64,000 nucleotides of DNA from Podarcis erhardii (taxonomy: Eukaryota), in assembly GCA_964252035.1 (NCBI GenBank), contig OZ176200.1. One strand, given 5' to 3'. The notes beneath the pieces are model-generated. The model saw only the letters and a list, made by a program, of their open reading frames with translations. It searched no databases and had not been told where the DNA came from. The first letter of the stretch is position 1, and every line of letters starts with the position of its first letter. Of this stretch, positions 14,985 through 57,765 are shown piece after piece. Made by a program: the position numbers and the translations under genes.

Positions 14985-15592
14985 CAGTGGCGTAGCGTGG
15001 GGGGTGCAGGGGGGGCCGGCCGCACCGGGCGCAACATCTTGGGGGGGCGCACTCACCGCCTCCGGAGTCGTCGAAGAGCCTCGGGCGCAGGCTGTAGCAG
15101 AGCCCCATGTCTCACAGAACCAACGAGCTGTGCGCACGTCTGGCCTGAAGGTGTCCGGCAGGCAGCGGCTCTCAGCGCTCGCCGCGGTCCCCGCGCTTCA
15201 GGGCCGCGGAGGGCGCGCCAGGCAGCCCCTCCTCACAGCCCCCCCCCGCCCCCGCCGCCGCCGCCGCTGCAGCTGCTGGGCCATGTTGCATTTTCCTCGC
15301 CTCTCTGCCCTCCTCCTCCTCCAGGCAAGCGGTGTCGTTTGGGCGGCAGTGCCAGCAGCAACTCGCCTCAGATCACCTGACACGGACCCGCTGCCGTGGC
15401 TACCTTACCGTAAACACCCCAGCCCAGGCAGCGGCAAGAAGAAGCTGGCAGCGGCGGCAGGTTAGGGGTTAGGGGCGCAAATTACTTGCCTTGCCCCAGG
15501 TTAGGGGGCGCAAATTACTTGCCTTGCCCCGGGTTAGGAGGTGCAAATTACTTGCCTTGCCCCGGGTGCTGACAACCCACACTACGCCGCTG
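14985..15592. mobile_element. Non-autonomous hAT-type element, long 'loaded' copy
   Basis: TIRs CAGTGGCGTAGCGTGGG / CCCACACTACGCCGCTG; perfect 8-bp TSD GGCACAGC; three subterminal ~34-bp repeats; GC-rich passenger about 15041-15459. Confidence 0.9.
15046..15108 (-). pseudogene. GNAL: Captured fragment of GNAL XL-isoform exon 1 (start codon region)
   Basis: Translates MGLCYSLRPRLFDDSGGGECA, 14/21 identical to recalled human XL-Golf MGLCYSLRPLLFGGPGDDPCA; then runs into TE terminus; no further GNAL sequence. Confidence 0.8.
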
Positions 15593-16009
15593 GGCACAGC
15601 TGCCTTCTGGGAAGTATAAATCAGCAAGGCCACACGCCTGGAGCAGGCCTGGATTGAGTCACACCACCAGGGTCACAACACTTGTGAGGATAGAGGAATT
15701 ATCCTTATACAGGGTCACTGAATTATAGTATGTGCAGCTAGATGGACAGTGACAACTCTGTGCCGCACATTGGGCAATTTTTTAAAAAATTACCTTTAGA
15801 AATACTTAAAGCAATTTATGAAACCCAGATATTTAAGGACTGTTTGAACACACCACAGTGGCAGAAAATTAAAAGTTTTTGTCCCTAGGTACCAAACTTT
15901 CAATAGCTCTAGCTTTGCACAACAGAAAACACCCTGACAACCCGCAGCCTTCTGCAAAATTCCTACTTCCTAGCTCTTCACCACTCAACTTTTCAATTCC
16001 AGTCCATTA

Positions 16010-16250
16010 CAGTGGTACCTCGGGTTACATACGCTTCACGTTACAGATGCTTCATGTTACAGACTCAGCTAACCCAGAAATAGTACCTCGGGTTAAGAAC
16101 TTTGCTTCAGGATGAGAACAGAAATCATGCTCCGGCGGCACGGCAGCAGCAGGAGGCCCCATTAGCTAAAGTGGTCTTCAGGTTAAGAACAGTTTCAGGT
16201 TAAGAACGGACCTCCGGAATGAATTAAGTACTTAACCCGAGGTACCACTG
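16010..16250 (+). mobile_element. Tc1/mariner MITE family A
   Basis: CAGTGGTACCTCGGGTTA...TAACCCGAGGTACCACTG, TA TSD; five copies in window. Confidence 0.9.
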
Positions 16251-16799
16251 TATTAACCTCTCCTGCATCCTGAAGAGTGCTTTGAGATCGGTCTTTGCTC
16301 TTAGTTTTCCTCACAATACTTTGTTTGTGGGCGCACTCACTCACTTTCATTGCCTTATCACAGAAAATCTTCCTGCTGAGGTAAGGCATTTGTCTTATCA
16401 GATAAAAACTTGTATCGCTTCAGTTTTTATTATATTAGTGGTTGGCTTTAATTGCTGTGAGCTGCCTTGAGTGGTGTGAAGGCACCAGAAAAGCAGGAAA
16501 CACATTTTTATATAACTAAATACATTTGCAGGGGAGAATCAGTGGCGGGGGGGGGGGGAGTTAAGCATCCCTACCTCCTGCCCAGCAATTTTTCCTTGTG
16601 TCAGCGCACATCTGCCAAGAGAGCATCTAATCTGGACCTAAGAGGAGTATTGTGGTGCATCTCAATTCCCCTTTCCTCTAGTTACCCACCTCTCTTTCCC
16701 TAGAAACACATTCAAAAAGTTACAGGCATATCTTAGGAAGTAAATCAATGCAATATCTTAGGGATGCTACACATTTAAACCAGCCTTTCTACAATATGA

Positions 16800-17128
16800 G
16801 GGACGTGGGTGGTGCTGTGGGTTAAACCACAGAGCCTAGGACTTGCCGCTGAGAAGGTTGGTGGTTCGAATCCCCACGACAGGGTGAGCTCCCATTGCTC
16901 AGTCCCAGCTCCTGCCAACCTAGCAGTTCGAAAGCACATCAAAGTGCAAGTAGATAAATAGGTACCACTCCAGAGGGAAGGTAAACGGCGTTTCTGTGTG
17001 CTGCTCTGGTTTGCCACATGACCTGGAAGCTGTACATCGGCTACCTTGGCCAGTAAAGCGAGATGAGCGCCACAACCCCAGAGTTGTTCACGAATGGACC
17101 TAATGGTCAGGGGTCACTTTACCTTTAC
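16800..17128 (+). mobile_element. Sauria SINE
   Basis: Near full length; TSD TTCTACAATAT (16787-16797 / 17129-17139). Confidence 0.92.
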
Positions 17129-17436
17129 TTCTACAATATATAAAAATGCTCTTGGACCTCTTGGCAAGCCTTTACTCCAAACTGTGGTCCCCGCATCTTC
17201 CTCCTACCAACCTTTTAAAAAATAAACAAAATGCTATACTTTCTGTTAGTCCCTCCAATGCACAGTTCATTTAGCTAGGACAAGCACAGCCTCACACTGC
17301 AAATAGTAGAAGTCACAGGCACATGTGCCAAGGATTTCAGCCAAATAGCTCCAAAGCTCTTCCAAAGCAGGAAGCAGCTCCTGCAGAGTTTCCCCCTATA
17401 CTTACCTGCTGAATAGCGGTGGTATAAAGGACTTAC

Positions 17437-17540
17437 TTGTATGTTTTGGTTCTGTCCAACCAGAGGCCAGTGATCAAAGCTCCAACCATGCCAGCCACGA
17501 CAATGGTGAGGCCAATGCGACCAGCGTTCAGCTGCTCATC
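17437..17540 (-). CDS. FLVCR2: FLVCR2 exon 5 (104 nt)
   Basis: gcAG|[36 protein letters not shown]|GTAAGT. Confidence 0.95.
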
Positions 17541-20853: not shown

Positions 20854-22023
20854 ACATAATAACTGGCTACACATTGCTTTGGACTGCCCTGGGCAAGATA
20901 AAGCAACCAACAAATTTAATACTAATAATAACTAAATGGCCTAAATGTGAGAAATGCTCTCAGGAAGATCCATTTCCATCCTTTTTTTTTTTAATTACTT
21001 TAATCCGTAACTGATCCCTGCCTCTTTCTTCTGAATTCCGTTCCACTGAATGACAGGGACAAAAGAGAGAGAGAAGACTTTCTGTCTGAAAGTCGTGCGT
21101 CTCTATTTCCTCAAAAGAATTCAAATGCAGAACAATAGTAGGACTGTCTCTAGCAACTAATTGTGATGCTCAGAGCAGCAGAGATGCCTGAATGCAAAAA
21201 GACTGCAGTACAGTACTGGTTCTGGAGGGATTAAGGAGAAGCAGGAACACTCTGCAAACTGTATTCCCACTCAAGACATCTTCTGCACTGTGCACAGGAG
21301 GAAGGAAAAAAAGACACCCCAAAATTGCTCCATCTCTTTCAGCCAGGAAGCCAAACCACCCAATCACTCCTTTGGCTACATAGCAGAACTGGAGCCAGAG
21401 CTCTCACAGCAATGAGAGGTCTGTCTTTACAACACTGCATACCCTGATCTCTCAAATAAACAAATAAGGTGGTTGTTGTCTAGAGCTAGAGAGAACCCAT
21501 AGAAAACAGGAGACATATCAATCTTTTCTGTTACTGTGGAGAGAGAACTGAACACAACCATCAAATCACTCTCGCTGTGCTAGGGCCCATAACTGAGACT
21601 TCTGTTGAGCAGAAGACATTGGGAGGAATTATGAGGCTTTGATTCTGTCTGGGCAAGCATTTCAGTTTGTCGGACAGAATAATTCCCCCTCTTCTCCTGC
21701 CACATGCTGTCCCCGGGGGTACTCCCATCCAACTCCTGAGTCAATTTTGGGGCAGGGTGTGTGTGTGCAGGAGGAGGGCGGGACAGGCCTACTGTGCAAG
21801 TGGAAGTCTTTGCTTAGGGCTTCTGCTGACAGGACTCCTCAGCTGAACCCTCCCCACACATTTCCACAGAACTTTACAACTCCTCCCTGTTTATAGATGC
21901 TTCCTCAAAGGAGGTTTCTTCATATTCTATTCAAAAACTTTCCCTTCCTTTTTATTTTCTCTGAGTTGCTGGTTTGTTAAAGGTTTTTTGGTGTGTGTGT
22001 TTGCAAAATTAGGAAGAAAAATA

Positions 22024-22281
22024 CCGTATTTTTTGCTCTATAAGACACACTTTTCCCCTCCTAAAAAGTAAGGGGAAATGTGTGTGCATCTTGTGGAGCG
22101 AATGCAGGCTGTGCAGCTATCCCAGAAGCCAGAACAGCAAGAGGGATTGCTGCTTTCACTGCATAGCGATCCCTCTTGCTGTTCTGGCTTCTGAGATTCA
22201 GAATATTTTTTTTTCCTTTTCCTCCTCCAGAAACTAGGTGCGTCTTGTGGTCTGGTGCGTCTTATAGAGTGAAAAATACGG
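22024..22281. mobile_element. Tc2/pogo-like MITE family B
   Basis: CCGTATTTTT / AAAAATACGG TIRs, TA flanks, internal palindrome CAGAAGCCAGAACAGCAAGAGGGAT. Confidence 0.88.
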
Positions 22282-22735
22282 TACTTGTTTTAAAGCTATC
22301 CCTCCGTACTGTGTTGGCAAATAGAGTTTCCAGTTTCAACCTTCATATTTAACTGACTGAGTTAAAAATATGAAATTGCATGTGCTCAGAGTTGTTGTTG
22401 TTTATCAAAGTTAGCAAACTGTGTCTTATGGAGTTTAGCATTTAAAGCAGTGGAATAAAGTGGGGTGGAAGAGAAATGTTCATTGTGTCTTCAATACTGA
22501 CACATGAAGAAATCAGAGGAGTGCCTCTAAACATTTTGATGATGGTGCTGACAGCAGCAAGAATCTTCTGTCAAGACTAAGTACAAGGAAGCTTTCTTCT
22601 TAATAAAAAGTTACAACCTTTTACATAGGTGGGGCTAACAGAAAGGGGAACACAAATCACAACAGATCATGGGATGTGGTTCTGACTGTGCTCTTTCCTC
22701 ACAAAATATTAGTTGCAGACTGTCTTAAAGGAAAT

Positions 22736-23544: not shown

Positions 23545-24046
23545 CTATGGAAAGAGCACAGAACCAGAAATTAGGGATGGATTGGACGCTGTGCCCAACT
23601 CTGCAGAACAAACATAGGAGCATTGGCAAAGAACCTTGCAGAGCAGGGGCTGATTTTGACAGAAGGGTGGGGCCTCAGCCTGTCAATCACCTGATGTCAC
23701 ATGATCTCCTTTGGCCCTTATGAGTGATTTAGATGGCGATGAAGCCATGGAAGCTTCAGCAATCAACTGATCACCGCCACTTGCATGGCATGTGTATGGC
23801 ACTTTGCAAGCCCTGGTGGTTAGCTGATGAGAAGCCGATTTCAGAAAAGAATAAACCTATCTGGTGCAAACTTTAGTCATCATTCTCACCTAGAGGTTTG
23901 TCATATGGATTTACTATTTCCAGACAGTACATATTTTACAGGAAGCAGGTGTCAAAAAGAGAAGTTCACGATTTCCGGATTTCACAAAGTGTCCAAACCT
24001 GATTTATAAATCAGCCTTAAACTGTATCCCACTTAAGTCTACTTAC

Positions 24047-24188
24047 CAAAAGCTACTAAGATGAAGAGTGCTGTTGCCACAGCTGCAGTCATAAAAAACA
24101 TGATGCTAATATGATAGGCCAGCTTCTCCTCCTCTTCCACATCGGGAACCAGAACTGGAGGCAGGAGGAAACCCACTGCAATGCCAAG
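24047..24188 (-). CDS. FLVCR2: FLVCR2 exon 2 (142 nt)
   Basis: tttAG|[48 protein letters not shown]|GTAAGT; size matches recalled human FLVCR2 exon 2. Confidence 0.95.
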
Positions 24189-26601: not shown

Positions 26602-26776
26602 CAGTGATGTCTATCAGGTAGATCGCGGGATGAAAGAAAGTGATCACCGAATGTAATGTTGGCCTCTAAAAAAAGCTCCACAACTTTGGCCCTTCCCTCC
26701 AATGTCAATGGGTAGATCACTGCCAGTTTTTTATACCGGGAACAGATTGCAGTCCCTTGGGAGTAGGACGTCCCTG
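26602..26776. mobile_element. Same hAT family as 57167, short copy
   Basis: Perfect TSD CTATAATG; shares CAGGTAGATC left end and GGTAGATCACTGCCAGTTTTT right end. Confidence 0.85.
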
Positions 26777-27094: not shown

Positions 27095-27615
27095 AAAAGC
27101 AATGACAAACCTAGACAGCATCTTAAAAAGTAGAGATATCACCTTGCCCACAAAGGTCCGTATAGTAAAAGCTATGGTTTTCCCAGTAGTGATGTATGGA
27201 AGTGAGAGCTGGACCACAAAGAAGGCTGATCGCCAAAGAATTGATGCTTTTGAATTATGGTGCTGGAGGAGACTCTTGAGAGTCCCATGGACTGCAAGAA
27301 GATGAAACCTATCCATTCTGAAGGAAATCAGCCCTGAGTGCTCACTGGAAGGACAGATCGTGAAGCTGAGGCTCCAATACTTTGGCCACCTCATGAGAAG
27401 AGAAGACTCCCTGAAAAAGACCCTGATGCTGGGAAAGACTGAGGGCACAAGGAGAAGGGGACAACAGAGGATGAGATGGTTGGACAGTGTTCTCGAAGCT
27501 ACCAGCATGAGTTTGACCAAACTGCGGGAGGCAGTGGAAGACAGAAGTGCCTGGCGTGCTCTGGTCCATGGGGTCACGAAGAGTCGGACACGACTAAACG
27601 ACTAAACAACAACAA
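27095..27615 (+). mobile_element. Bov-B (RTE) LINE 3' fragment
   Basis: MTNLDSILKSRDITLPTKVRIVKAMVFPVVMYGSESWT...RLND with a premature TGA at 27303-27305; (CAA)n tail. Confidence 0.95.
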
Positions 27616-28001
27616 TTCCCAAGGTCCCCAAAAGAAGACAACCAGCTTAATTTCTCTATAGCTGTGAGGAAAGAATACAGATCTGAGCCTTTACTTGAAA
27701 AGGAAATAAGGCCACTGGCCACACTGGCTGGGAGTTGGAGTCCATGGAATATTTGGAGGTCCCCCATCCCTGATCTACAACTATAGCAAATCCTAAAACT
27801 GATGCCAGCTACTTCCTCCCACAGACCAGCATGCAATAGTAGATCAGAACAAACCTAAAATTTAAATATTCCTCTTGTCATTTCTTCTGTTTTTACATGC
27901 TCAGCTGGTGGTTAGGATAAAAGAAATTTGGTCAAATTTCTTCACTATCATGACGGGCAATCCTGCACTTCACATGTGGTTCGGAGACAGTTGCCAATAT
28001 A

Positions 28002-28260
28002 CCGTATTTTTTGCTCTATAAGACTCACTTTTTCCCACCTAGAAAGTAAGGGGAAATGTGTGTGCGTCTTATGGAGCGAATGCAGTCTGCGCAGCTATCC
28101 CAGAAGCCAGAACAGCAAGAGGGATTGCTGCTTTCACTGCACAGTGATCCCTCTTGCTGTTCTGGCTTCTGAGATTCAGAATATATTTTTTCTTGTTTTC
28201 CTCCTCCAAAAACTAGGTGCGTCTTGTGGTCTGGTGCATCTTATAGAGCGAAAAATACGG
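28002..28260. mobile_element. Tc2/pogo-like MITE family B
   Basis: As 22024 copy, TA flanks. Confidence 0.88.
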
Positions 28261-28356
28261 TAGTTCCTTCCGTTGGCAGGAAAACCACAACAGGCTCTAA
28301 GAACAACTTTTAATTTGGATACATTGGGTAGCATTCAACATAGCATTACTCAGAGT

Positions 28357-28722
28357 AAAAGGAAAAGGTAAAGGACTGCTGACAGTTAAGTCCAGTCACG
28401 AACAACTCTGGGGTTGTGGCGCTCATCTCGCTTTACTGGCCGAGGGAGCCGACGTTTGTCCGCAGTTTTTCCGGGTCATGTGGCCAGCATGACTAAGCCA
28501 CTTCTGATGAAACCAGAGCAGCACACAGAAACGCCGTTTACCTTCCCGCTGGAGCGGTACCTATTTATCTACTTGCACTTTGATGTGCTTTCAAACTGCT
28601 AGGTCGGCAGGAGCAGGGGCCGAGCAACAGGTGCTCACCCCGTCGTGGAGATTCGAACCGCCAACCTTCCAATCAGCAAACCCTAGGCTCAGTGGTTTAG
28701 ACCACAGCGCCACCCGCGTCCC
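28357..28722 (-). mobile_element. Sauria SINE
   Basis: Full length reverse copy; TSD TACTCAGAGT (28347-28356 / 28725-28734). Confidence 0.92.
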
Positions 28723-29099
28723 TGTACTCAGAGTGCATCCATTGAAATTAATTAATAAGGTTAACTGAGGTCCATTAATTTCAACAGGTCTACTCTAAGT
28801 AAAACTCAGTTGTCTACTACCCAGTGTTTTGTGAACACTGTTAAACGAAGAGTAAAAAAGCAGAAAGAAGCCCCCCAAAAATATGTTAAAGTCAATCTTG
28901 CTTTTTCACTTTTTTTTATTACAGACAAAAGCAAAATGAAAAGGTTTAAGCATTATTTCTCAAAGAAGCCAAAGACTCACACATCCTGGCAATCCTTATG
29001 ATTGCACCTCCTAGAAGGATTTTCCAGAAAACTTTTTGTCCACAATTAAAATGAGCCTGAAATGTCTGTCAGTGAGAAAAAGAATTAATGAGCTCTGCC

Positions 29100-29257
29100 C
29101 AGTGGCGTAGCGTGGGGGGTGCAGGGGGGGCCGGCCGCACCGGGCGCAACATCTGGGGTTAGGGCAAATCCACAGGTTAGGGGGCGCAAATCCACGGGTT
29201 AGGGGGCGCAAATTACTTGCCTTGCCCCGGGTGCTGACAACCCACGCTACGCCACTG
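29100..29257. mobile_element. Same hAT family as 14985, short 'empty' copy
   Basis: Same termini CAGTGGCGTAGCGTGGG / CCCACGCTACGCCACTG; perfect TSD GCTCTGCC; no passenger. Confidence 0.9.
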
Positions 29258-29546: not shown

Positions 29547-29903
29547 TAAGGTAAAGGTAAAGGGACCCCTGACCATTAGGTCCAGTCATGGCCGACTCTA
29601 GGGTTGCAGTGCTCATCTCGCTTTAGTGGCCAAGGGAGCCGGCATACAGCTTCTGGGTCATGTGGCCAGCATGACTAAGCCACTTCTGGCAAACCAGAGC
29701 AGCGCACAGAAATGCCGTTTACCTTCCTGCGGGAACGGTACCTATTTATCTACTTGCCCTTTGACGTGCTTTCGAACTGCTAGGTTGGCAGGAGCAGGAA
29801 CTGAGCAACGGGAGCTCACCCCGTCATGGGGATTTGAACCGCCGACCTTCTGATTGGCAAGTCCTAGGCTCAGTGGTTTAACCCACAGCGCCACCCGCGT
29901 CCC
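29547..29903 (-). mobile_element. Sauria SINE
   Basis: Full length reverse copy. Confidence 0.9.
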
Positions 29904-32222
29904 TTGGACCACTGTGGATGCATTTCCCCTAATAAACATGGAAGTGGGCACGTGATCCTTTCCCATGTAAGAACTGCCTTCGTGGAGGATGTATATGACC
30001 AGTGGTACCAGCAAAACCACTGCTGGACAAACACCCTCCAAGTACCACAATCCCTCCACCCTCCTTTCCAGGCTGGTTTGCACAAAACACAAATAGACTG
30101 ACTCAACCTCACCACACACAAATAATGTATATTGCTTTCTAATATAGCACAAAGGACTCCATTTAGAAAAGCAATTTGAACTTCATTTAAAAAAGAAAAG
30201 AAAAACAGCTTTGGCAGAGTTTGTAGTAAGCCTTTATGGACTGAACATCTGAAATAACCACATGCAGAAATGCATAAACACGGAGCTATTCAGGGGGAAA
30301 GCAGAATACCACAGGGAGCATGGTCATCAGCTAAAAAATTCTGCAGAGTAAGAAAGGAAGGCAGATATAACTCCTACAGAATAAAGCACAGCCGGAAATG
30401 CGAACACATCTTGCGACCAAGCAGCCAATGACATGGCACTTTCAAAAAGGACTTCTGACCTGGTCACAACTCATCTCAGAGGTTCAAGTCACTGAGCAGC
30501 ATCTTCCTTTATTTCCAGCACTCAAGCAAGTGTGTCATCACTTCTGTCATCAAAATCACACCAACCACATGCTAAAAAGGAAATATTAGCCAACTTGGGG
30601 AAACACCAAAGTTTACACAAATACAAAGGGGGGGGGGGCTAAAGAGATAGGACCCAAAAGCACCCCAGTGATGGCTGAGCATGTTCACTGGGCATGAAGT
30701 GCACTGTTGGGGAGGATGGAAAACAAAGAGGAAGAAAGAAGGGAATGGAGAGACCTGAAAGAGAAGAAGGTGGTTGACTGGGACCAGGAACAATATGTTG
30801 CAGGGAGGGATTGTTGCAGGTCCAACCTGTGGCCTTTAAGTCAAACTGGCTTAATGTTTATCCTACAGTCTCTTTTTCCTTAACAGTGCAATCTTATCCA
30901 TGTTTAAATGGAAAATTCCCACTGAGTTCAATGAAGCTTACTCACAGGGAAGTGGATCTAAAAGTAGAGCCTCAGGGTCTGATTTCTAATGGCTACTGTC
31001 TAGGAGGAGAGATTCAGGAACCAAACAGGTTTCCAAGTGTGGGGAAACCATATATGAGTAAGCACCACTCAGATCAAAGGGACACTCCAGAACAAGGTAG
31101 GAACAGAGCAATGTAGCTGGAATATCAAACAAACACATTTTGCAATACCAGTCACCTAAATTTCAAAAGGAGTGTTGTTCTCCACAATTTGCCAAGACAC
31201 AGAAACTTGCCAAAGTGAACTTGAGAATCACACCCCCAACCAAAGGATAGCAGAAACATTTTTTAAATGAGTTGCCCAGGGTCAGCTGAAGGCACCATGG
31301 GAAGGTGCTGTGAAACTGCTCCTCCTGCCTGCCAGGAATAGCGTAATGGCCAAGGGGAGACCAAGAGGGTCCCATCCATCAGCCAGAGAAGGAGCAGCTG
31401 CAGGAAACCTGCAGAAAGGATGCTCCACTCCAAATGCCAGCTGCACTGGGACCGCAGAAGCAAGATGGGAAGATGCTCTACATCCACCAAAGAACAAGAG
31501 CCCCCAAAAGACTATTCAGTAAGGAAACATCAACAAGCAAATAAATAAACAGAAAATGGCCTAAACTCAACTACAGAGAAATGCCTGGTTATTCTTCACC
31601 TCTTTGTTCTGGCCTTAAAGAACTTATTTCCTTCCTCTACTTCTTCCACCCTCTCCCCTTCCCTGCTGTGTCTTTGTGAGCCCGGTAGCAAGGCCCCTCC
31701 CTCCCTCTCTTTTTAATGTGAACTTCTTTGGGAAACAATAATTTTCTGAAAAGCAGCACTAAGATGGAGTAAAATAAATAATCACACCGGTTTTGCTGGC
31801 TACTACAAGACCCACAAGGGCAGAAGACACATGGCTACACCCTATTTCCTCCTCACTAGGGAGATATTTCAGCCATTCATACAGAAGGGTAAATGCTGCA
31901 ACTATCTGGTGAAGCCTTACCAGAATGGTGCTTATTCCACAATTTCCACTGTCAGCCATATGTATGGACAGCAGCCTTGAGCAGAGGAGAGGAAGTCCCT
32001 GGTACGTGCGGGTTGTGGGGATTGGATGTGCCATTGCCATAAGTGCAACCAATCCCAAAAATAAGTGCACTGCAGTCAGGCCCAAGCTAAGTGTCAACAG
32101 ATGCACTACAGAAAGTGGCATGCAGGCTATTTGTGTCTCAGTGTTGCTTAATTTCCCCTCTGGCTGGCATCTAGGTTTACAAACCCAGTCATTTCTTCAT
32201 GAGCCACATCTCTGCTGGAATA

Positions 32223-32463
32223 CAGTGGTGCCTCAGGTTACATACGCTTCAGGTTACATATGCTTCAGGTTACAGACTCGCTAACCCAGAAATAGTGCTT
32301 CAGGTTAATAACTTTGCTTCAGGATAAGAACAGAAATCGGGCTCCGGCAGCACAGCAGCAGCAGGAGGCCCCATTAGCTAAATTGGTGCTTCAGATTAAG
32401 AACAGTTTCAGGTTAAGAACGGACCTCCGGAACAAATTAAGTACTTAACCTGAGGTACCACTG
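32223..32463 (+). mobile_element. Tc1/mariner MITE family A
   Basis: Full length, TA flanks. Confidence 0.9.
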
Positions 32464-32686
32464 TACAACACACACTCCACTTTCTCCCCTGGACTTTAGA
32501 AGCAATTACTGTGGTACCTCGGGTTAAGTACTTAATTCGTTCCAGAGGTCCATACTTAACCTGAAACTGTTCTTAACCTGAAGCACCACCTTAGATAATG
32601 GGGCCTCCTGCTGCTGCTGCACCGCCGGAGCACGATTTCTGTTCTCATCCTGAAGCAAAGTTCTTAACCTGAAGCACTATTTCTGG

Positions 32687-36929: not shown

Positions 36930-37500
36930 CATAGCTGTCAACTTACAGATTTGAAAATAAGGGACCAGCAGCCTTGAAAATAAGGGACCACCAGCCAAAA
37001 TAAGGAACCTGCAGCCTCACCTGTTCCAGGCACTCCAGTCTTCCTGTCCTCCTGCAGTCTGGTCAAACTCATGCTGGTAGCTTCGAGAACACTGTCCAAC
37101 CAACTTTGTAACCAGAGGTTCAACTAACTAGAATCTGAATCACATGCACCACAAGGCCTATGCAGCCTCAACTTAAGATGGCTCCGTGGCCTGGCTTTGC
37201 ACTGCAAAGTTTGCAGTAGCACATGCAACAAAATGGTGTCCAGCATTCAAAAAAAACCCTCAGCTTGCATTAACTAGCCACACACAAGGCATGCAAGCTC
37301 CACCCCCCAGTCGTTCTTAGAATTCTTATTGGGTGAGCAACACAGCCAAGCAACACAGTTGGAGCCTTCCTCTTCCCTGGCCGGCAGGGAGGGAGGGAGA
37401 GGAGCTGCTTCCTTTGAAATTTAAGGGACATCCATAAATAAGGGACATGGCACTGGAATAAGGGACTGTCCCTTCAAATAAGGGACACTTGATAGCTATG
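36930..37500. mobile_element. hAT-type element with passenger (includes Bov-B piece)
   Basis: TIRs CATAGCTGTCAA / TTGATAGCTATG; perfect TSD ACCTGTAC; AAATAAGGGA subterminal repeats. Confidence 0.88.
37028..37102 (-). mobile_element. Bov-B 3'-region fragment lacking tail, inside the hAT at 36930
   Basis: Reverse complement of the WLDSVLEATSMSLT...segment of the Bov-B copy at 27.5 kb. Confidence 0.8.
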
Positions 37501-37544: not shown

Positions 37545-38338
37545 CAGGGGTTAGCAAACTTTTTCAGCAGGGGGCCGGTCCACCGTCAATCAGACCTTGT
37601 GGGGCCAACTATATTTTTTTTTGGGGGGGAACGATTTTCGCCCGCCCACAAAGAGGCCTGAAGATGCTTCGCTTTACCTGTCCCAGTTGCTGTCCCAATA
37701 GCTGCAGTTGGGTTTCTCCAGCCAGCCAAGCGCCATGGCAGAGTAGGAGGCTGCGTTGGCTGGCGAAGGCAGAAGCAGCAGCCCCAGCAGAGGAGCCGCG
37801 GACGGAGGTAGGGGAACCAGAGCGTCGCGGAAGCTTTTACCCACCACCTGCTGCTACCGCTTCCCAAGGGGCAGTGTGAAGACAGAGCCTCCTGCCAACC
37901 CGCAAGCAGCGGCTGTGGCCACCGCAACAGCCTGCCTGAATGCCATGGGAGGAATGAAGGAGGGAGGGAGGGATGAAGAAAGCGTGTGAGGAAGCGGCGC
38001 AGAGAGGGAAGGAAGGGCAGACTGAGGGAGAGGAAGGAGGAGGAGGAGGAGGAAAATGCAGCAGCGGCCGGCAGCTGGCGTCACATGCCCCCTTCACAGC
38101 ACCGCCCTGCTGAGGCAGGCAGGCGGGTGAGCTGACTACCGCTATCGATGGCACCAGGCATGGGACAAGATTGCTTCATCCCTGAGGAGAAAAGCGCAGC
38201 CGTGTGAGGGAAAGAGAGGGAGAGGAAAAGAATATGTGCGCTGGCAATCCACTCTGCGATTCCTGTACCGTTCATGGGCCGGATCTAGAAGGCAATTGGG
38301 CCTGATCTGGCCCGTGGACCTTAGTTTGCTGACCCATG
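37545..38338. mobile_element. Non-autonomous hAT (Charlie-like termini) with passenger
   Basis: TIRs CAGGGGTTAGCAAACT / AGTTTGCTGACCCATG; degenerate 8-bp TSD CTCCAATC/GTCAAATC (6/8); GC-rich interior. Confidence 0.8.
37678..37946 (-). pseudogene. PGAM5: Captured PGAM5 exon 1 copy with donor site, one in-frame stop
   Basis: MAFRQAVAVATAAACGLAGGSV...GKR*...YWDSNWD-AG|GTAAAG; both ends match recalled PGAM5 (MAFRQALQLAACGLAGGS; WDPNWDR at exon 1 end, phase 2). Confidence 0.85.
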
Positions 38339-38382
38339 GTCAAATCCCATATAAAGGATCTATCTTTGAGTTCTATTTGACC

Positions 38383-38385
38383 TTT

Positions 38386-38429
<44 letters not shown>

Positions 38430-38470
38430 TCCTCCCTCCTTTCCTTCCTTCCTTCCTTCCCCCCCTCTCT
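38383..38470. repeat. (TTTC)n/(TTCC)n microsatellite
   Basis: Direct reading. Confidence 0.95.
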
Positions 38471-40311: not shown

Positions 40312-40313
<2 letters not shown>

Positions 40314-42256: not shown

Positions 42257-43149
42257 TATGTAGAGGAAAGGACTACCTCCTTTCCTCTAGCCCCCAGCAT
42301 CTCTTTGTCTCTGACCTTATACTATTGAACAAGATGGAAATAGTTGGTATTATTTAATTTGGTGGTCCTCAAACCCTGTTTGGCCATGGACCACTGCTAA
42401 GAATATTGGTGGACCACTCAATGATTCTTCTGTGTATTGTAGCAATTACAATGGTGATAGATGCTGTATGATTTGTAATTTTATTTTTGATCGCTTCTTT
42501 CATTTCCGTATGTTGGACAAGGTTCAACGTACTTTGTCCCTTCTGTGCCCCCACCCACTAATTTATTTATTTTGATGGTGTTGCCATTGCAATGACATGA
42601 CAACTTGCTCAATTGATCTGAAAGAGGCACCAGGACACATAGTGGCTGCTTTGGTGGCGAATGCACAAGGATTAATACAAAAAAGGCCCCCCATTAAATG
42701 TGCTTTTAATGGAAGGTGTGGGTGTGACCAGAGATCCTTGTAGAGATCAAGTGAGCACTGACAACAGGGCGACTTTCCCAAAGACCTTCCTTTTTACCCT
42801 GGCATTTCCTGATTGTAGATATTGAAGTTTTATTTTAGTTGTGGCTGTTGCAGCTGAACCGCTGTAGTTGAATCACTTTGAGATTCATACATTTATAAAT
42901 GAAAAGCTGTATCTAAGTTTTGAAAGACACAATCGGAATTCTATAAACTTCAACCTGCAACACAATATAAGAAACACAAATGCAATAGAAAATCAGTACA
43001 AATATTAAAAGGCAACGGATGCACCATCTCCTATTTTCAGCCACAGATACACTATGAAGGATCTGAGTCAAGCCTGTGGACAGCTGGTGATCTGTGGATC
43101 ACAACTTGGGAACCCGTGGCTTAATGCATACCTGAATATTTTGCCACCT

Positions 43150-44720
43150 ACCTGGTTACCAAAGACAGCGATGGAGCAGGCACTGGAGACCTCCCGGGAC
43201 CCAAACCAGACGGAAGCGATGTGGGACGGCATGCCCAGGATGAAGACTTGGGCCAGCGAGCAGACGACCTGTCCCAGGACGGTGACGGGGAAGAGGTTTG
43301 GCTTCGTGCTGCCCGTCTTCACCCAGGCGCCCACGCAGTTGAGAGCGGAGCCCGCCAGGGCGATGAGGCGCAGCCCCTTCTTGTCGAGCAGCCAGGCGAC
43401 CGGGAAGAGCAGCGGGATGTAGACGAGCATGTAGCACATGGAGAGCCAGTCGATGGCGAAAGGGGTCACGCCGTAGAAGCGCGCGAAGACCACGCTGATG
43501 CTGCCGTACTGGATCCACTGGAAAGCGTTGCAGAACGAATAGGCGCTGAAGAGGAACACGATTGCCCAGCGGCGCCGCGTCAGGCGCACCTCCGGCACCG
43601 ACCCCGGCGCCGACCCGTTGGGCGTCTCGGCGTCCGCCGGCTCGGGCTTCGACTCTTGCAGCAGGTCGGGCTCGGCTCGGTACCCCGTCCGCTTCTCTCC
43701 CAGCTCCGGCTCCCCGCTCACCATAGCGGCCGAGGAAGTGCGCGCTGAGCGACAAGTTCCTCCTCCGACGGCGGGACACCAGCGCGGGCTCGGGGACCCC
43801 TCGCTCTTCCCTCAGCCAGCAGCCCCGGTGCCGCGAGCGCCCCCCGCGCGCCCGCCTCGCCTCGCCGGACTTTCCTCCTCTTGCGCTCACCTTTCGCGGC
43901 TCATGTTGCCAGCTCAAGGTTTGCCTCCGCGGCGCACGTCACCACGCCCCGCCCGCCGAGGCGCGTCAGCCAGAAACCACCGCCCCCCCCCCCGGCCCGC
44001 GTTGGAAGGAGCTACCTGGACGCCCACCACCACGCCCCTCCGGGCGCGGATTGGCTGCCTGCCCCCCGCCCCTCTGCGCTGCTTCCTGCTCTTGCTATGG
44101 CAACTCTCTCCGTCCCGCGAAAAAGCCCCGGGAGGGGCGCAGAAAGTGGCGCAGGCGCGCGCCCCCCGACGGTCCCGTCCGGGAGTCTGCAGCCGCGCGG
44201 CGCCGTTAGCCGTGCGCCCTGCGCAGCCTCCGGGAAAGCGGGGTGGGGGTGGGCCTGCCGAGCTCTTCTCCCGCCTTCCGCTCGCACCTTTTCGGCGGCC
44301 TCACGAGCTCCCGCTTCGTTTTGCTCTGAGGGCGGGAGCGCGGGAAGGACCTGACAAAATTCTTCCGGCGGCGCGTCGACCGAGAGGAACGTGGCTCGAA
44401 AGACCGCCAGTCATCCGGTCCTAGTCATTAGCTTGGGGAAGAGGGGGGCGACGTCCCGGTTCGCGGGCTGCCAGGCTGAGGGTGCGCACACCGACCAGGT
44501 CGGGTCCCCCCCCCCCTCAATTCGGATTGGAAAGTAAACGGGGAGGGTGCGCGCAGCCTGCCGGTAAAATCGGGGGCTGAAGCTGCTTCCTAGTTCCTGG
44601 TTCGCTGCCCGAGGCAAAAGCGACTTGATAAAAGAGCGGGGAACCAACTCTCTGTCCATAGCACAACGGGGCTTGCAGGTCAGTGGCCGAAGTCCCGGGT
44701 CGCAAATGACCTCCGAGAAA
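43150..44720. promoter_or_regulatory. FLVCR2 CpG island / promoter
   Basis: Very GC- and CpG-rich over exon 1 and upstream; GC/KLF boxes at 43942-43954 and 44030-44038, CCAAT (minus) 44050-44054, NRF1-like GCGCAGGCGC 44149-44158. Confidence 0.85.
43152..43724 (-). CDS. FLVCR2: FLVCR2 (MFSD7C) coding exon 1, 191 codons
   Basis: ORF MVSGEP...[27 protein letters not shown]...VFGNQ matches the FLVCR family N-half; ends at CAG|GTAGGT donor (phase 0); inside CpG island. Confidence 0.96.
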
Positions 44721-48520: not shown

Positions 48521-48699
48521 CATAGCGGTCAACTTTCAGATTTGAAAATAAGGGATCAGCAGCCTTGAAAATAAGGGATCAGCAGCCTCGCCTGTCCCGG
48601 GGACAGTCTCCAGGATATCTAACAATCCAGGATAGCAGTGGGAAACGGCGCTGGAATAAGGGAATTTCCCGCAAAAAAAAGGGAAGGTTGACAGCTATG
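48521..48699. mobile_element. Same hAT family as 36930, short copy
   Basis: CATAGCGGTCAAC / GTTGACAGCTATG TIRs; perfect TSD CTCCTGCT; shares left about 70 bp with the 36930 copy. Confidence 0.9.
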
Positions 48700-49566
48700 C
48701 TCCTGCTGCAGTAGGGAATGTCCTAGAAGTAGCTTATACCTGACAGTAGTTTCAGCTCAAAGGAATTGGATCACTATTTGTTCAGAAAAATATAGAGAAA
48801 TGTTCAGAAGGAGATAAGGCAAATCCTGGCATCATGTGTGATACACACACCCTGAAAGAACATGAGCAGCAGGGATTTTTTAAAGCCAGAACTCGGCAAA
48901 ACTCAATTTCGGCACCTCTCAGGTGGGCACCTTTGCCATTATAAGAGAACAAGGGATGTGTTCATGGCAAGTTCCAGCACCTCTTTTTCTAGAAAAACAG
49001 CGCTAATGAACAGTGATATAAATTCCTTACAAACTTTGAAAGAAGGTGATTGGGTGATTGATGGGAGTGTCCCTGACTTTGTGCACATCAGGCCAGGTTA
49101 AAAATAGGGTGCATGCCCCATTAAATGAAAACAACTTCTATACACATGCTGATGAGCCAAGCAGCAGCCCAGAGTACAAACTCTGAGCCAAGTGGCAGAA
49201 TGTGATGGAGCAGGGGTAAAGGTTGTGAACCGTTCATGAGATGGTCAGTCTATTCCCCTGCACATAATTAAGAGTGCATACTCAAGATAAGAACATAAAC
49301 ATTGCCTTACTAGATCAGGTCAAGGTCCATCCTGCATTCTGCTGCCAACAGTGGCCAACCTTAGGAAAGCACACATATGTGAATGTGACAGCCATCGTCT
49401 TTGACCCCACTTTCTGGAAGCGGGAGGTATACTGCTTCAAAACATGGAGGGTTCACTCTAAGCCACTGCTGCAGTGTTCATTCATCTATATTCAACCCTG
49501 TTTCCAAATACATCTAAGCTGGCAGCCTTCATCACCATCTCATGGCATTAAATTTGGCAACGACTA

Positions 49567-49900
49567 TGGGTTAAACCACAGAGCTTAGGACTTGCCGATC
49601 AGAAGGTTGGCGGTTCGAATCCCCGTGACGGGGTGAGCTCCCGTTGCTCGGCCCCTGCTCCTTCCAACCTAGCAGTTCAAAAGCACGTCAAAGTGCAAGT
49701 AGATAAATAGGTACCACTCCAGCAGGAAGGTAAACGGCGTTTCCGTGCGCTGCTCTGGTTCACCAGAAGCGGCTTAGTCATGCTGGCCACATGACCTGGA
49801 AGCTGTACGCCAGCTCCCTTGGCCACTAAAGCGAGATGAGCACCGCAACCCCAGAGTCGTCCGTGACTGGACCTAATGATCAGGGATCCCTTTACCTACC
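49567..49900 (+). mobile_element. Sauria SINE, slightly 5'-truncated
   Basis: Same body as other copies; followed by an older CR1-like 3' remnant. Confidence 0.9.
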
Positions 49901-53172: not shown

Positions 53173-53672
53173 AAATTAAAAGACGCCTGCTTCTTGGGAG
53201 AAAGGCAATGACAAACCTAGACAGCATCTTAAAAAGCAGAGACATCACCTTGCCAACAAAGGTCCGTATAGTTAAAGCTATGGTTTTCCCAGTAGTGATG
53301 TATGGAAGCGAGAGCTGGAGCATAAAGAAGGCTGATTGCCGAAGAATTGATGCTTTTGAATTATGGTGCTGGAGGAGACTCTTGAGGGTCCCATGGACTG
53401 CAAGAAGATCAAACCTATCCATTCTGAAGGAAATCAGCCCTGAGTGCTCACTGGAAGGACAGATCGTGAAGCTGAGACTCCAATACTTTGGCCACCTCAT
53501 GAGAAGAGAAGACTCCCTGGAAAAGACCCTGATGTTGGGGAAGATGGAGGGCACAAGGAGAAGGGGACGACAGAGGATGAGATGGTTGGACAGTGTTCTC
53601 AAAGCTACCAGCATGAGTTTGACCAAACTGCAGGAGGCAGTGGAAGACAGGAGTTGGACACGACTAAATGAC

Positions 53673-55220: not shown

Positions 55221-55373
55221 TATGGGCGTAGTCAGTGGGGCAGGGAGGGGCAGCTGCCCTCCATCAAGTAAAACAATAGAATTGCTTAACTAACTGACCA
55301 ATCATGATGGTTCTGCCCCCCCCCCACAACAAAGTCCTGCCTCCCCCCAACAAAAATCCTGTCTACACCCATG
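55221..55373. mobile_element. hAT-type MITE
   Basis: TATGGGCGTAG / CTACACCCATG termini; TSD TTCCCTAA/CTCCCTAA (7/8). Confidence 0.7.
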
Positions 55374-56373
55374 CTCCCTAACACAAGTTTTAACAAGTAT
55401 TTATCAGGCCCAATTTTCTCAATGGAAGCTATCTTTAATGTGTAGAGATGCAGCCTCAAGTTCTCCATTGCAGCTATATGGAGGACTGGACAGTAGTTCC
55501 CATCAGAGGGGGAAAGGTGCAGCCCTAGAGGTAACAGGAAATACTTCAACTTTGGTGTTTCTATGAAATTATTTCAAAAGACAGAACAGATTATGCCTGG
55601 CTTTATGGAATTTGTGCCATAGCTTTGCTGTACTGTATCTCCCAAACCAATTAGCAATGCAACTATACAGCTCGCTGCCTCTGTGTATTGCATAACTATT
55701 ACAACATTTTTCAGGACCAGATTTTCTATCCACCAGAGTAGACCACCGTTTTACTGAGCATTTGTCCTGATTTATTTGCAAAAACTTTTCAGGGTGTCTG
55801 CTTGTTTGAAGGAAGGTTATTACACGATGTACCACTCAATTGCCACGCCAAACTTGCTAGTGCATTTCCCTGTCGCAAGTTACCTCAGAAAGTTTGATAT
55901 TTTTGGAAGTGGGTTTGTTGTGGTTGGAAGAGTTCAAGTCCACTTTCACTGTACAACCCTAAATTTGCCAGCATATGCTTAAATCCCACCTGCAAAGTAG
56001 TGACAATCTGGAAGAAGCCTCAGAATGACTTCCTCCTAGGGCAAATAGCAGCTGTGGGTGAGGAATTTGGATGAGGACCATGGCTGGGACAGAGGGTTAA
56101 ATTCCCTGACCACCACCACCACTGCAGTCTTAGTCCACCTTGGTTTCCTCTGTGGCTGCTATTTAGCAAACAAAACCCCAAGCACAGCATTGTTCATCAT
56201 GTAGAACACGTATTTTGTCCTGAATATGCAGCAACAATTCATAGTGGCTTCCTTGCCCAGTTTCCCTTGTCTCGTTGTTTCTTAACTCTGCAAGGGAAGG
56301 TCAGACCAGGTTTAAAAAATAAAACATTAAACTTATATATATATATATACTGTATATATATAAAAAAGAGATC

Positions 56374-56379
56374 TTTATT
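56374..56379 (-). terminator. Probable BATF polyadenylation signal
   Basis: AATAAA on minus strand about 380 nt after the BATF stop, followed by an AT-rich tract. Confidence 0.55.
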
Positions 56380-56754
56380 TAAAAAAATAATGGATCAACA
56401 CCTTTTGTTCTCTGTGTCCACAGAACCACTAGTATACATTTTACAACAGAACATGGCTTATTGTACAAGGCTCTGTGATAAGAAGATCAGTGCAAACAAC
56501 AGAACAGTACCGATAGCGGTTACTGTAGATTAAATCACACACACAATAACCTGCAGGTGAGTCTCGCATGTCACAGGTTCTTCACAAAGGCCAAATCCTA
56601 CTGACATTTTACTCCTTATTCAGGACAGCACCTGCCAACAGATATATGGGAATACCCCCCCCCAATGGTCCATAGTGGTGAGGTACATCTCTCCTCCTCC
56701 TCCTTCTGTCCAGGCACGGAGTCTGCAAACTTTTCCCAGTCCTAGAAGTTGCTC

Positions 56755-56964
56755 TCAATGCTGGAAGCATGGGGCACTGATGTGGGTCTGGGGAAAGGGG
56801 AGTGGCGTGAAAAGCACTTCGGTGGGGGCTGGGGGCTGCGTATGGAGGATGGAGCAGTGAGTCTCGTGGGAGGTCAGCATGGCAGAGAAGTGTTTCAGTT
56901 CATCTGACAGTTGCTTGATCTCCCGGCGCAAAGCGGCATTCTGCCTCTCCAAGTCTTGACTCTC
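56755..56964 (-). CDS. BATF: BATF exon 3 (leucine zipper to stop, 210 nt)
   Basis: aaAG|ESQDLERQNAALRREIKQLSDELKHFSAMLTSHE...HISAPCFQH*; matches BATF C-terminus; BATF-FLVCR2 synteny. Confidence 0.95.
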   Translation of the reverse strand, partial: ESQDLERQNAALRREIKQLSDELKHFSAMLTSHETHCSILHTQPPAPTEVLFTPLPFPQTHISAPCFQH

Positions 56965-57166
56965 CTTTGAAGAAAAGGGGGGAGGGAATCAGTTAGAAAC
57001 GATAGGCCCACCGTGGAGAAAGAAAATGGGGCAGTCCAGTGGCTGAAGGGCCAAATGCAGGCCTTGGCCTAATTATATGTAGGCGACATGGCGAGGAAAA
57101 ACTGAGGTAAAAGAGGATGAAAGAAGGAAGTTGCATCCACACCATAAATTTATATTACATTTAAAG

Positions 57167-57765
57167 CAGGCATGTCCAACAGGTAGATCATGATCTATTG
57201 CGTATCGAGACCCCTCAGCCACCTCCTCATTGGGAAAAAACTCACACCAGGACACAGGTATTAAGTTTATGTTATTGGGCATATTTGGTCACAACTTTAT
57301 TGAATTACAGAATGTGAGCGGTATTGGCTTAGGAATTGATTGAACCCAACTATATCTGACTCCTGCCCGCAGCGCAGGAAGTCCGTTCCAAGAGGAAGTC
57401 CTCCGGCTCGCTCCTCCATTTAAACTGCCCCGGCCATGCCCTCCTGGCCAGCGGATTGGCTAGCCAGGCTCTGATGTGGCTGGGATCCCCCGGGCAATGG
57501 GGGACAAAGTCCCCTGCTCCCAGTGGGAAGTGGATGGCCATGTGGTCCACCACAACTCCTCCCCACTGTTAGATCACCGACTCCCCTCAATGTTGTCTCC
57601 CCTGAAAAAAGCTCAACTACTCTGACCTGAACCCCTAAAAATGGGGCTTTCCTCTTCCCTACAAAAGCTCAACAACTTAGACCAGAACCTCAAAAAATGG
57701 GGGTAGATCACTGCCAGTTTTTAACTGTCGGTAGATCGCAGTCTCTTGGGAGTTGGCCACCCCTG
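57167..57765. mobile_element. hAT-type element with LTR-like passenger in BATF intron 2
   Basis: TIRs CAGGCATGTCCAAC / GTTGGCCACCCCTG; perfect TSD ATTTAAAG; GTAGATC motifs; insert about 57201-57564. Confidence 0.85.

What the first reader, a model, noticed from the sequence alone, without database searches (positions are those of the whole stretch)
14985..57765. A Pack-hAT system: paired empty and loaded copies in three families, with first-exon cargo
Seen: three hAT-type families each have a short and a long copy, all with perfect 8-bp TSDs (29100 vs 14985; 48521 vs 36930; 26602 vs 57167), and a fourth family (37545) is loaded. Both identifiable gene cargos are GC-rich first exons containing the ATG of unrelated genes. 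Known: Pack-MULEs in plants favour GC-rich gene pieces, and Pack-type TIR elements have been reported in animals. Inference: this lineage may have an unusually active gap-repair capture process that disperses CpG-island first exons and promoters into introns. No transposase is present in the window, so mobilisation would be in trans. Whether this is already described for lacertids could not be checked.
Basis: partly seen in the sequence, partly recalled or inferred. Interest (0 to 1): 0.8.

Follow-up and report, generated by a model that had tools for sequence, protein, structure and literature searches.

The report
Old gene-carrying hAT mini-transposons, not fresh captures
Seven small cut-and-paste (hAT-type) transposons in and upstream of a lizard FLVCR2 gene are real, and one carries a copy of the first exon of PGAM5, but the long copies belong to repeated transposon subfamilies that spread after rare old captures, a process already described in animals.

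Summary
All six paired elements exist at the stated places with perfect 8-bp target-site duplications. The fourth-family element (37545-38338) has only a 6/8 duplication.

- **37545-38338:** it carries PGAM5 upstream DNA, the whole coding exon 1 from the ATG, the splice donor and about 27 nt of intron. The peptide aligns to the N-terminus of cobra PGAM5, which matches human PGAM5 (5MUF). The same loaded element lies collinear at two other Podarcis lilfordi loci, with a further copy known from an annotated protein. Read depth suggests tens of copies. Pairwise distance is about 0.18, so this is an old, amplified Pack-hAT subfamily.
- **36930-37500:** the interior is covered hundreds of times over single-copy depth, so it is an ordinary long family form built of repeats, not host cargo.
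- **14985-15592:** it holds 422 bp of CpG-rich DNA starting an ORF. The GNAL-XL origin could not be tested here.
- **57167-57765:** the interior is undetermined.

Earlier notes of this scan list at least seven more GNAL-type loaded copies on other DNA of this genome. They were not checked here.

Pack-hATs are known in animals (Tan et al. 2021). An unusually active capture process is not supported. This is a new member of a known kind.

The parts
14985..15592 (.). F1_long: hAT-type non-autonomous element, 608 bp, TIR CAGTGGCGTAGCGTGGG, perfect TSD GGCACAGC (14977-14984 and 15593-15600)
15041..15462 (-). F1 insert absent from the short copy: 422 bp, GC 0.70, CpG o/e 0.78. On the minus strand, about 354 bp are followed by an ATG at 15108 and 23 codons (MGLCYSLRPRLFDDSGGGECAPP) before the transposon sequence resumes. 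The GNAL-XL origin rests on recall and was not tested. A 9-bp microhomology (GGGGGCGCA) links the insert's left end to the subterminal repeat unit.
   Evidence: searches returned nothing
29100..29257 (.). F1_short: 158-bp copy of the same family, perfect TSD GCTCTGCC, in FLVCR2 intron 1
36930..37500 (.). F2_long: 571-bp element with an 8-bp TSD, TIR CATAGCTGTCAAC, perfect TSD ACCTGTAC. The whole interior is repetitive, at about 840-2600x read depth against about 3x in the flank.
37026..37105 (-). Piece of a very abundant repeat inside F2_long, about 90% identical to the ends of 27095-27548 and 53201-53654. Reads pile to about 32,000x at 37056-37115 and run on into their own consensus on both sides (loose ends at 37048 and 37102).
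48521..48699 (.). F2_short: 179-bp copy, perfect TSD CTCCTGCT, upstream of FLVCR2
26602..26776 (.). F3_short: 175-bp hAT-type element, perfect TSD CTATAATG, in FLVCR2 intron 1
57167..57765 (.). F3_long: 599-bp hAT-type element, perfect TSD ATTTAAAG. It is only 74-83% like F3_short at the ends. The origin of the interior (about 57200-57560, GC 0.54, CpG o/e 0.42) is undetermined.
37545..38338 (.). F4: 794-bp hAT-type element, TIR CAGGGGTTAGCAAAC / CATGGGTCAGCAAAC, decayed TSD (6/8). The termini have about 1300-6300x read depth.
37650..38255 (-). F4 cargo, about 606 bp (GC 0.61): about 309 bp upstream of the PGAM5 ATG, coding exon 1, the donor and about 27 nt of intron. Read depth is 8-68x against about 3x in the flank, which means tens of copies.
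37678..37946 (-). Copy of PGAM5 coding exon 1: ATG at 37946, 89 codons plus 2 nt, ending ...YWDSNWD(R). There is one in-frame stop (TAG at 37856-37854) where other copies read Q. The GT donor is at 37677-37676 (GACAG|GTAAAG).
43145..43724 (-). FLVCR2 coding exon 1 within the gene's own CpG island (43.0-44.5 kb, GC 0.67, CpG o/e 0.97)
24042..24188 (-). FLVCR2 exon 2 (matches residues 224-269 of 8qcx). Intron 1 therefore holds F4, F2_long, F1_short and F3_short.
10535..10666 (-). A later FLVCR2 exon (residues 373-412 of 8qcx). F1_long lies in an intron between this exon and exon 2.

Best explanation
The window holds seven non-autonomous TIR transposons with 8-bp TSDs (hAT type), from four families. 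They lie in introns of FLVCR2 and upstream of it. The long copies are not freshly loaded partners of the short ones. Each belongs to its own repeated subfamily.

**F4 (37545-38338).** This is an old, multicopy Pack-hAT. Once, in an ancestor, repair of a double-strand gap at a hAT element switched template to the PGAM5 locus (inferred). The repair copied about 309 bp of upstream DNA, the complete ATG-containing exon 1, the splice donor and about 27 nt of intron. The chimera kept both termini. A hAT transposase supplied in trans then moved it to tens of places (shown: collinear copies at independent loci; inferred: the enzyme).

**F1_long (14985-15592).** This is most likely the same kind of product and younger, with a CpG-rich 5' gene start. 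The GNAL-XL origin is unverified.

**F2_long.** This is simply the common long form of a family with hundreds of copies, and its interior is a mosaic of repeats. F2_short is an internal-deletion derivative.

**F3_long.** Undetermined.
For: **Structure**
- Six perfect 8-bp TSDs and short TIRs.

**Read depth (run X24)**
- The unique flank has about 2.5-4.5x.
- The F2_long interior has 840-2600x. Assembled contigs of run X15 skip internal parts, which marks deletion derivatives.
- The F4 termini have about 1270-6300x.
- The F4 cargo has 57-68x at 37656-37775 and 26-32x at 38076-38255.
- Nearly all cargo reads share letters that differ from the window copy, as expected for one member of a family.

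**F4 cargo is PGAM5 exon 1**
- The two window peptides align to residues 1-32 and 40-96 of P0014 (Naja naja). BLASTP aligns 20/32 residues at the N-terminus and 13/17 at the end of exon 1.
- P0014 carries PF00300 and matches human PGAM5 (5MUF) at E = 2.4e-74, including the WDxNWDRREPL segment.
- WDxNWD is the conserved N-terminal PGAM5 motif (PMC5501728).
- The exon copy is followed by GTAAAG.

**Other loaded copies**
- L001 and L002 come from two other P. lilfordi chromosomes. They are collinear with the window element from TIR to TIR and have different flanks.
- A further P. lilfordi copy is known from protein P0002.
- Pairwise K2P is 0.18-0.19 for all three pairs, and similar in cargo and termini.
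- A gecko locus has the exon-like sequence without F4 termini.

**F1**
- The insert sits exactly at a breakpoint of the short form, with 9-bp microhomology.
- Unchecked notes of this scan list at least seven other GNAL-type loaded copies in this genome.

**Literature**
- Pack-hATs and the gap-filling model are described in Tan et al. 2021 (PMC8277862).
Against: - The parental PGAM5 locus of this genome was not retrieved. The host-to-transposon direction rests on the exon being conserved from snake to human while the hAT ends are not seen at the gecko locus.
- Copy numbers are rough. Sampled coverage was only about 1-3x, reads needed 85% identity while the known paralogues are about 84% identical, and the central GC-rich part of the cargo was not measurable.
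- Runs X22-X24 may come from a related Podarcis rather than the window's own species.
- F1 cargo identity and copy number were not tested here.
- The F3_long interior was not tested.
- No autonomous hAT was found, so mobilisation in trans is inferred.
- The F2 TIR starts CATAG, so a P-like superfamily is not excluded for that family.
Confidence: 0.72

Rival explanations
1. One reading: this lineage has an unusually active gap-repair capture process. It repeatedly loads hAT mini-elements with CpG-island first exons and promoters, so short and long copies are empty and freshly loaded states of the same elements.
For: - Two elements with gene 5' ends lie in one 64-kb window.
- The F1 insert lies precisely at a breakpoint of the short form, the termini are 98% identical, and CpG content is still high at 0.78.
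- An unchecked scan note describes one ~165-bp backbone with 'different CpG-rich inserts'.
- Tan et al. report that multicopy Pack-TIRs tend to have high-GC cargo.
Against: - The F4 cargo has the same boundaries in three loci and is old, with K2P about 0.18. That is one capture, then amplified.
- The F2_long interior is high-copy repeat DNA.
- The scan notes on GNAL describe the same cargo again and again, not different cargos.
- Only two capture events are identified, and one is unverified, so no enrichment test is possible.
Confidence: 0.15
2. All long forms are just longer family consensus sequences with no host origin, and the exon resemblance is chance.
For: - True for F2_long by read depth.
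- The F4 and F1 long forms are themselves multicopy.
Against: - The F4 insert matches PGAM5 from Met1 to the exact end of exon 1 and is followed by a GT donor. Linked E-values are 1e-27 and 2e-74.
- Only about 1-5% of reads at the F4 termini are matched by cargo depth, so the cargo is not the family's general interior.
Confidence: 0.06
3. Transposition-independent gap filling in place. A hAT element already sitting at each site was broken and repaired with ectopic host DNA, giving single-copy Pack-TIRs. This is the main route proposed for animals by Tan et al. 2021.
For: - This model explains most animal Pack-TIRs (PMC8277862).
- The TSDs would be preserved.
Against: - The F4 cargo is present at other loci with its own TIRs and different flanks, and at tens-fold read depth.
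- Unchecked notes report that the F1 loaded form recurs in other windows.
Confidence: 0.05

Closest known systems
Multicopy Pack-TIRs of animals, for example Pack-hAT-N8_XT of Xenopus tropicalis (Tan et al. 2021, PMC8277862)
   Same: A non-autonomous hAT backbone carries a few hundred bp from the 5' end of a host gene. In the frog it is 291 bp of the CAPSL 5' UTR. The element is found at several loci with separate TSDs and has high-GC cargo.
   Different: - Here the cargo includes a complete ATG-containing coding exon, the splice donor and the start of the intron.
- Copy number appears to be tens rather than 3-5.
- The family is old, with about 18% pairwise distance.
- The host is a lacertid lizard. 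That study found 0 Pack-TIRs in its only lizard genome, anoCar2.
Pack-MULEs of rice and other plants
   Same: Non-autonomous TIR elements carry GC-rich 5' gene fragments and are amplified by a transposase supplied in trans.
   Different: The superfamily is different. MULEs have 9-11 bp TSDs and long TIRs (established knowledge). These elements have 8-bp TSDs and TIRs of about 13-17 bp.
Internal-deletion derivatives with filler DNA made by abortive gap repair (maize Ac/Ds, Drosophila P elements)
   Same: - Short copies keep only the termini and subterminal repeats.
- The breakpoints show microhomology (9 bp at the F1 junction).
- Contigs of other F2 copies skip various internal parts.
   Different: No autonomous parent was seen here, so the relation between deletion series and parent is inferred.
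Single-copy Pack-TIRs made by transposition-independent gap filling (Tan et al. 2021)
   Same: TE ends flank host-derived DNA, by way of template switching.
   Different: The F4 loaded form is present at several independent loci, so it transposed after the capture.

Membership tests
hAT superfamily, non-autonomous element (MITE-like) | 8-bp target-site duplication | tested here: met
   Six of the seven elements have perfect 8-bp TSDs. F4 has 6/8, and its paralogue L001 has 7/8.
hAT superfamily, non-autonomous element (MITE-like) | Short TIRs (about 10-25 bp), typically starting CAG/TAG (YARNG) | tested here: inconclusive
   F1, F3 and F4 start CAGTG, CAGGC/CAGTG and CAGGG. F2 starts CATAG, so a P-like element with an 8-bp TSD is not excluded for F2.
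hAT superfamily, non-autonomous element (MITE-like) | An autonomous partner that encodes a hAT transposase with matching termini | not testable with these tools
   Nine of the 16 ORFs of 130 aa or more in the window were scanned and gave no Pfam family; the other seven lie in the F1 insert and the FLVCR2 exon 1 / CpG island. The rest of the genome could not be searched.
Pack-TIR (Tan et al. 2021) | Both TE termini flank internal DNA that is not TE but derives from a host locus | tested here: met
   - F4: met. The interior matches PGAM5 exon 1 with its donor.
- F2_long: not met. The interior has 840-2600x read depth.
- F1_long: not verified.
- F3_long: not tested.
Pack-TIR (Tan et al. 2021) | A parental copy is identified elsewhere in the same genome | not testable with these tools
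   No search of the lizard genome was available. Only a cobra PGAM5 protein and a gecko exon-like locus without hAT ends were obtained.
Multicopy (transposed) Pack-TIR | The same cargo with the same boundaries lies inside the same termini at different loci with different flanks | tested here: met
   For F4, the window copy, L001 and L002 are collinear from TIR to TIR with unrelated flanks. A fourth copy is known from protein P0002. Cargo depth is 8-68x against about 3x in the flank.
Pack-MULE | Mutator-type ends: 9-11 bp TSD and long TIRs | tested here: not met
   The TSDs are 8 bp and the TIRs are about 13-17 bp.

The most novel reading that the evidence does not exclude
Lacertid genomes carry hAT mini-transposon subfamilies that have amplified modules of promoter, first exon and splice donor (PGAM5, and perhaps GNAL-XL and others) to tens or hundreds of copies. 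Many lie sense-oriented in introns, as both do here within FLVCR2. They could therefore act as dispersed alternative promoters or first exons that make chimeric transcripts. That would be an animal counterpart of rice Pack-MULE biology, on a scale not reported for vertebrates.
Probability: 0.2. Interest if true: 0.7.

Novelty: new member of a known kind. Interest (0 to 1): 0.4.

Why it matters
In animals, transposed (multicopy) Pack-TIRs are rare. Tan et al. found four among 370 Pack-TIRs in 100 genomes, each with a handful of copies, and none in their only lizard.

A lacertid hAT subfamily that carries a whole first exon with its donor, in tens of copies, is a clear additional case. It shows that such elements can spread CpG-rich, promoter-like DNA into introns.

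It also matters for annotation. The P. lilfordi gene set calls these transposon-borne exon copies 'hypothetical predicted protein, partial', and CpG-island or promoter predictions in these genomes will be inflated by them.

It does not show a new mechanism.

Tried and rejected
- **F1 insert, protein searches.** I searched the 153-aa antisense ORF and the 56-aa MGLCYSLRP ORF. Both returned nothing, so neither the GNAL origin nor the F1 copy number could be tested.
- **Peptide strings in papers.** A full-text search for the strings found nothing relevant.
- **PDB and Pfam on the short cargo peptides.** No hit.
- **ESM Atlas on the exon 1 peptide.** It returned only generic small mitochondrial membrane proteins and was not used.
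- **Scan-note look-ups by sequence and by relatives.** Both returned nothing.
- **Rfam and tRNA scans of the window.** Nothing found, so the abundant repeat inside F2_long could not be typed as a tRNA SINE.
- **Frameshift in the window's PGAM5 copy.** I first read one there. Reading the sequence base by base showed a single in-frame stop instead.
- **Gecko locus L003.** No PGAM catalytic exon was found within 11 kb downstream, so it is only a tentative parent-type locus.
- **Rejected explanations.** A processed pseudogene nested in a MITE is rejected because the cargo keeps the donor and intron start. An assembly artefact is rejected because reads and independent loci show the same structure.


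Full report
**1. What is there**

A self-comparison of the window and direct reading of the named places confirm seven TIR elements.

| Element | Coordinates | Length | TSD |
|---|---|---|---|
| F1_long | 14985-15592 | 608 bp | GGCACAGC, perfect |
| F1_short | 29100-29257 | 158 bp | GCTCTGCC, perfect |
| F2_long | 36930-37500 | 571 bp | ACCTGTAC, perfect |
| F2_short | 48521-48699 | 179 bp | CTCCTGCT, perfect |
| F3_short | 26602-26776 | 175 bp | CTATAATG, perfect |
| F3_long | 57167-57765 | 599 bp | ATTTAAAG, perfect |
| F4 | 37545-38338 | 794 bp | CTCCAATC / GTCAAATC, 6 of 8 |

- The TIRs are short, about 13-17 bp.
- They start CAG in F1, F3 and F4, and CATAG in F2.
- The F1 and F2 pairs are clearly one family each (92-98% at the 5' end).
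- The two F3 elements share only 74-83% at their ends.
- None of the nine ORFs of 130 aa or more that were scanned matches a Pfam family, so no transposase was found. The other seven such ORFs lie in the F1 insert and the FLVCR2 exon 1 / CpG island.

**2. Read-depth test of 'loaded'**

Raw reads of three DNA runs, and the contigs of the run that matches the window exactly in the flank (X15), were laid on 36576-38375. The figures below are from WGS run X24, summing both orientation columns.

| Stretch | Depth |
|---|---|
| Unique flank 36576-36875 | 2.5-4.5x |
| F2_long interior, all bins | 840-2600x |
| 37056-37115 | about 32,000x |
| F4 5' terminus | about 6300x |
| F4 3' terminus | about 1270x |
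| F4 cargo 37656-37775 | 57-68x |
| F4 cargo 37776-37835 | 37x |
| F4 cargo 37836-37955 | 8-14x |
| F4 cargo 38076-38255 | 26-32x |

- At 37048 and 37102 the reads run on into a different consensus. That stretch is a piece of the repeat also seen at 27095-27548 and 53201-53654.
- X15 contigs show other F2 copies that skip 256, 366 and other lengths of the interior.
- F2_long is therefore the ordinary long form of a family with hundreds of copies. F2_short is a deletion derivative. The interior is not single-copy host cargo.
- The central low-complexity part of the F4 cargo (about 37945-38065) was skipped by the tool.
- At most variable cargo positions nearly all reads carry a letter different from the window's, for example 37 of 38 reads at 37690. 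The window copy is one diverged member of a family.
- Depending on whether single-copy depth is taken as the observed ~3.3x or the ~1.3x expected for a ~1.5-Gb genome (my assumption), the cargo stands for roughly 10-50 copies at 85% identity or more.

**3. Identity of the F4 cargo**

- On the minus strand, an ATG at 37946 opens 89 codons plus 2 nt that end at 37678.
- The exon copy is followed directly by GTAAAG.
- There is one in-frame TAG at 37856-37854.
- A profile-free search of 1.84 billion representative proteins with the 57-aa ORF found three P. lilfordi 'hypothetical predicted protein, partial' entries (70-75% identity), plus squamate read-through ORFs.
- One of these, P0006, was used as a query. 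It found a 228-aa Naja naja protein (P0014) carrying PF00300, at E = 1e-27 over the whole exon 1 region.
- The two window peptides align to residues 1-32 and 40-96 of P0014. BLASTP aligns 20/32 residues at the N-terminus and 13/17 at the end of exon 1.
- P0014 matches human PGAM5 (5MUF) at E = 2.4e-74. The WDxNWDRREPL segment follows exactly where the window's exon copy stops.
- WDxNWD is the conserved N-terminal activating motif of PGAM5 (PMC5501728).
- The cargo is therefore about 309 bp of PGAM5 upstream DNA, the complete coding exon 1, the donor and about 27 nt of intron.
- The presence of the donor and intron start excludes an mRNA-derived copy.

**4. The loaded F4 element is a transposed family**

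- DNA around two of the P. lilfordi proteins was retrieved: L001 on OX395135 and L002 on OX395143.
- Each contains the whole element, collinear with the window copy from TIR to TIR, with the same cargo boundaries and unrelated flanks.
- L001 has a 7/8 TSD (ATCTAACT / ATCTAACC).
This suggests, but does not prove, that the window comes from that chromosome of P. lilfordi.
- Pairwise K2P is 0.18-0.19 for all three pairs and similar in termini and cargo. This is a star-like pattern: one capture and then a burst of transposition long ago.
- A Gekko kuhli locus has the exon-like sequence without any F4 terminus. This fits a host origin.

**5. F1_long**

- Compared with F1_short, 422 bp (15041-15462; GC 0.70, CpG o/e 0.78) are inserted exactly after ...GCAACATCT.
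- The insert's left end shares 9 bp (GGGGGCGCA) with the element's subterminal repeat unit. This is the kind of microhomology expected from template switching.
- On the minus strand, an ATG at 15108 opens 23 codons (MGLCYSLRP...) before transposon sequence resumes.
- I also recall this as the start of the GNAL XL isoform, but that is memory, not a test.
- Earlier notes of this scan are unchecked AI notes and serve only as leads. They list at least seven further hAT elements with a 'GNAL XL' start in other windows of this genome. One follow-up states hundreds to thousands of copies.
- If that holds, F1_long is also a member of an amplified loaded subfamily and not a local capture.

**6. F3_long**

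Its interior (about 57200-57560) has no recognisable ORF and could not be tested.

**7. Context**

- FLVCR2 runs on the minus strand.
- Exon 1 is at 43145-43724, inside a true CpG island (GC 0.67, CpG o/e 0.97). It matches FLVCR2 structures better than FLVCR1 (267 vs 221 bits).
- Exon 2 is at 24042-24188, and a later exon is at 10535-10666.
- F4, F2_long, F1_short and F3_short therefore lie in intron 1.
- F1_long lies in a later intron.
- F2_short and F3_long lie upstream of the gene.
- Both gene-start cargos are in the sense orientation of FLVCR2.
- Whether they are used as promoters or first exons is unknown.

**8. Known or new**

Tan et al. 2021 (PMC8277862) report the following:
- They described 370 Pack-TIRs in 100 animal genomes, of which 208 are hAT.
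- Most were single-copy and attributed to transposition-independent gap filling.
- Only four were multicopy, three in frog and one in alligator.
- One frog hAT carries 291 bp of a 5' UTR in three copies.
- Multicopy cases tend to have GC-rich cargo.
- Their only lizard (anoCar2) had none.

Searches for lacertid or squamate Pack-type reports in the held library found nothing specific. The phenomenon and mechanism are therefore known. The lacertid PGAM5-carrying family is a new member, notable for carrying a whole first exon with its donor and for its copy number.

**9. Verdict**

- The 'paired empty and loaded copies' framing fails for F2 and is weak for F3.
- The inferred 'unusually active capture process' is not needed. 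A few captures followed by ordinary trans-mobilisation explain what is seen.
- The same kind of element was already noted repeatedly by this scan on other DNA of this genome.

Noticed in passing
window 16008-16252; 32221-32689; 60723-61795: Tc1/mariner-type MITEs (TA|CAGTGGTACCTC...GAGGTACCACTG|TA), about 245 bp and 90-93% alike. There is one solo copy. One place has two inverted copies side by side. Another has two inverted copies that flank 604 bp of apparently unique DNA, which could be a composite or two independent insertions.
   Followed up: partly
window 27095-27548 and 53201-53654: Two copies (95% identical over 454 bp) of a very abundant repeat. Its terminal ~80 bp also sits inside F2_long, where about 55 bp (37048-37102) draw about 32,000x read depth. 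No tRNA or Rfam match was found, so its class is unknown.
   Followed up: partly
window 12491-12738, 16799-17128, 28359-28723, 29548-29904, 49564-49897: Five copies (82-91% identical) of a repeat of about 350 bp, in both orientations. Not classified.
   Followed up: no
window 21964-22283, 27996-28262, 35271-35595: Three copies (about 93-94% identical) of a repeat of about 270-320 bp that contains an internal inverted segment.
   Followed up: no
window 38380-38440: A (TTTC)n / (TTCC)n microsatellite lies about 40 bp past the 3' end of F4.
   Followed up: no
L001 3001-3196 and L002 3001-3267 (P. lilfordi GCA_947686815.1): The public P. lilfordi annotation calls the transposon-borne PGAM5 exon 1 copies as separate genes ('Hypothetical predicted protein, partial'). 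These are likely annotation artefacts caused by this element family.
   Followed up: partly
L003 9111-10243 (Gekko kuhli CM122942.1): A PGAM5 exon-1-like sequence is split by about 700 bp between the MAFR...SVAIG part and the ...YWDINWDR part. The record is flagged UNVERIFIED_CONTAM. No PGAM catalytic exon was found within 11 kb downstream.
   Followed up: partly
window 15466-15567: F1_long has three tandem copies of a ~32-bp subterminal unit (GGTTAGGGGGCGCAAATTACTTGCCTTGCCCC). F1_short has variant units in which CCAC replaces the TTACTTGCC part. These may be transposase-binding repeats.
   Followed up: no
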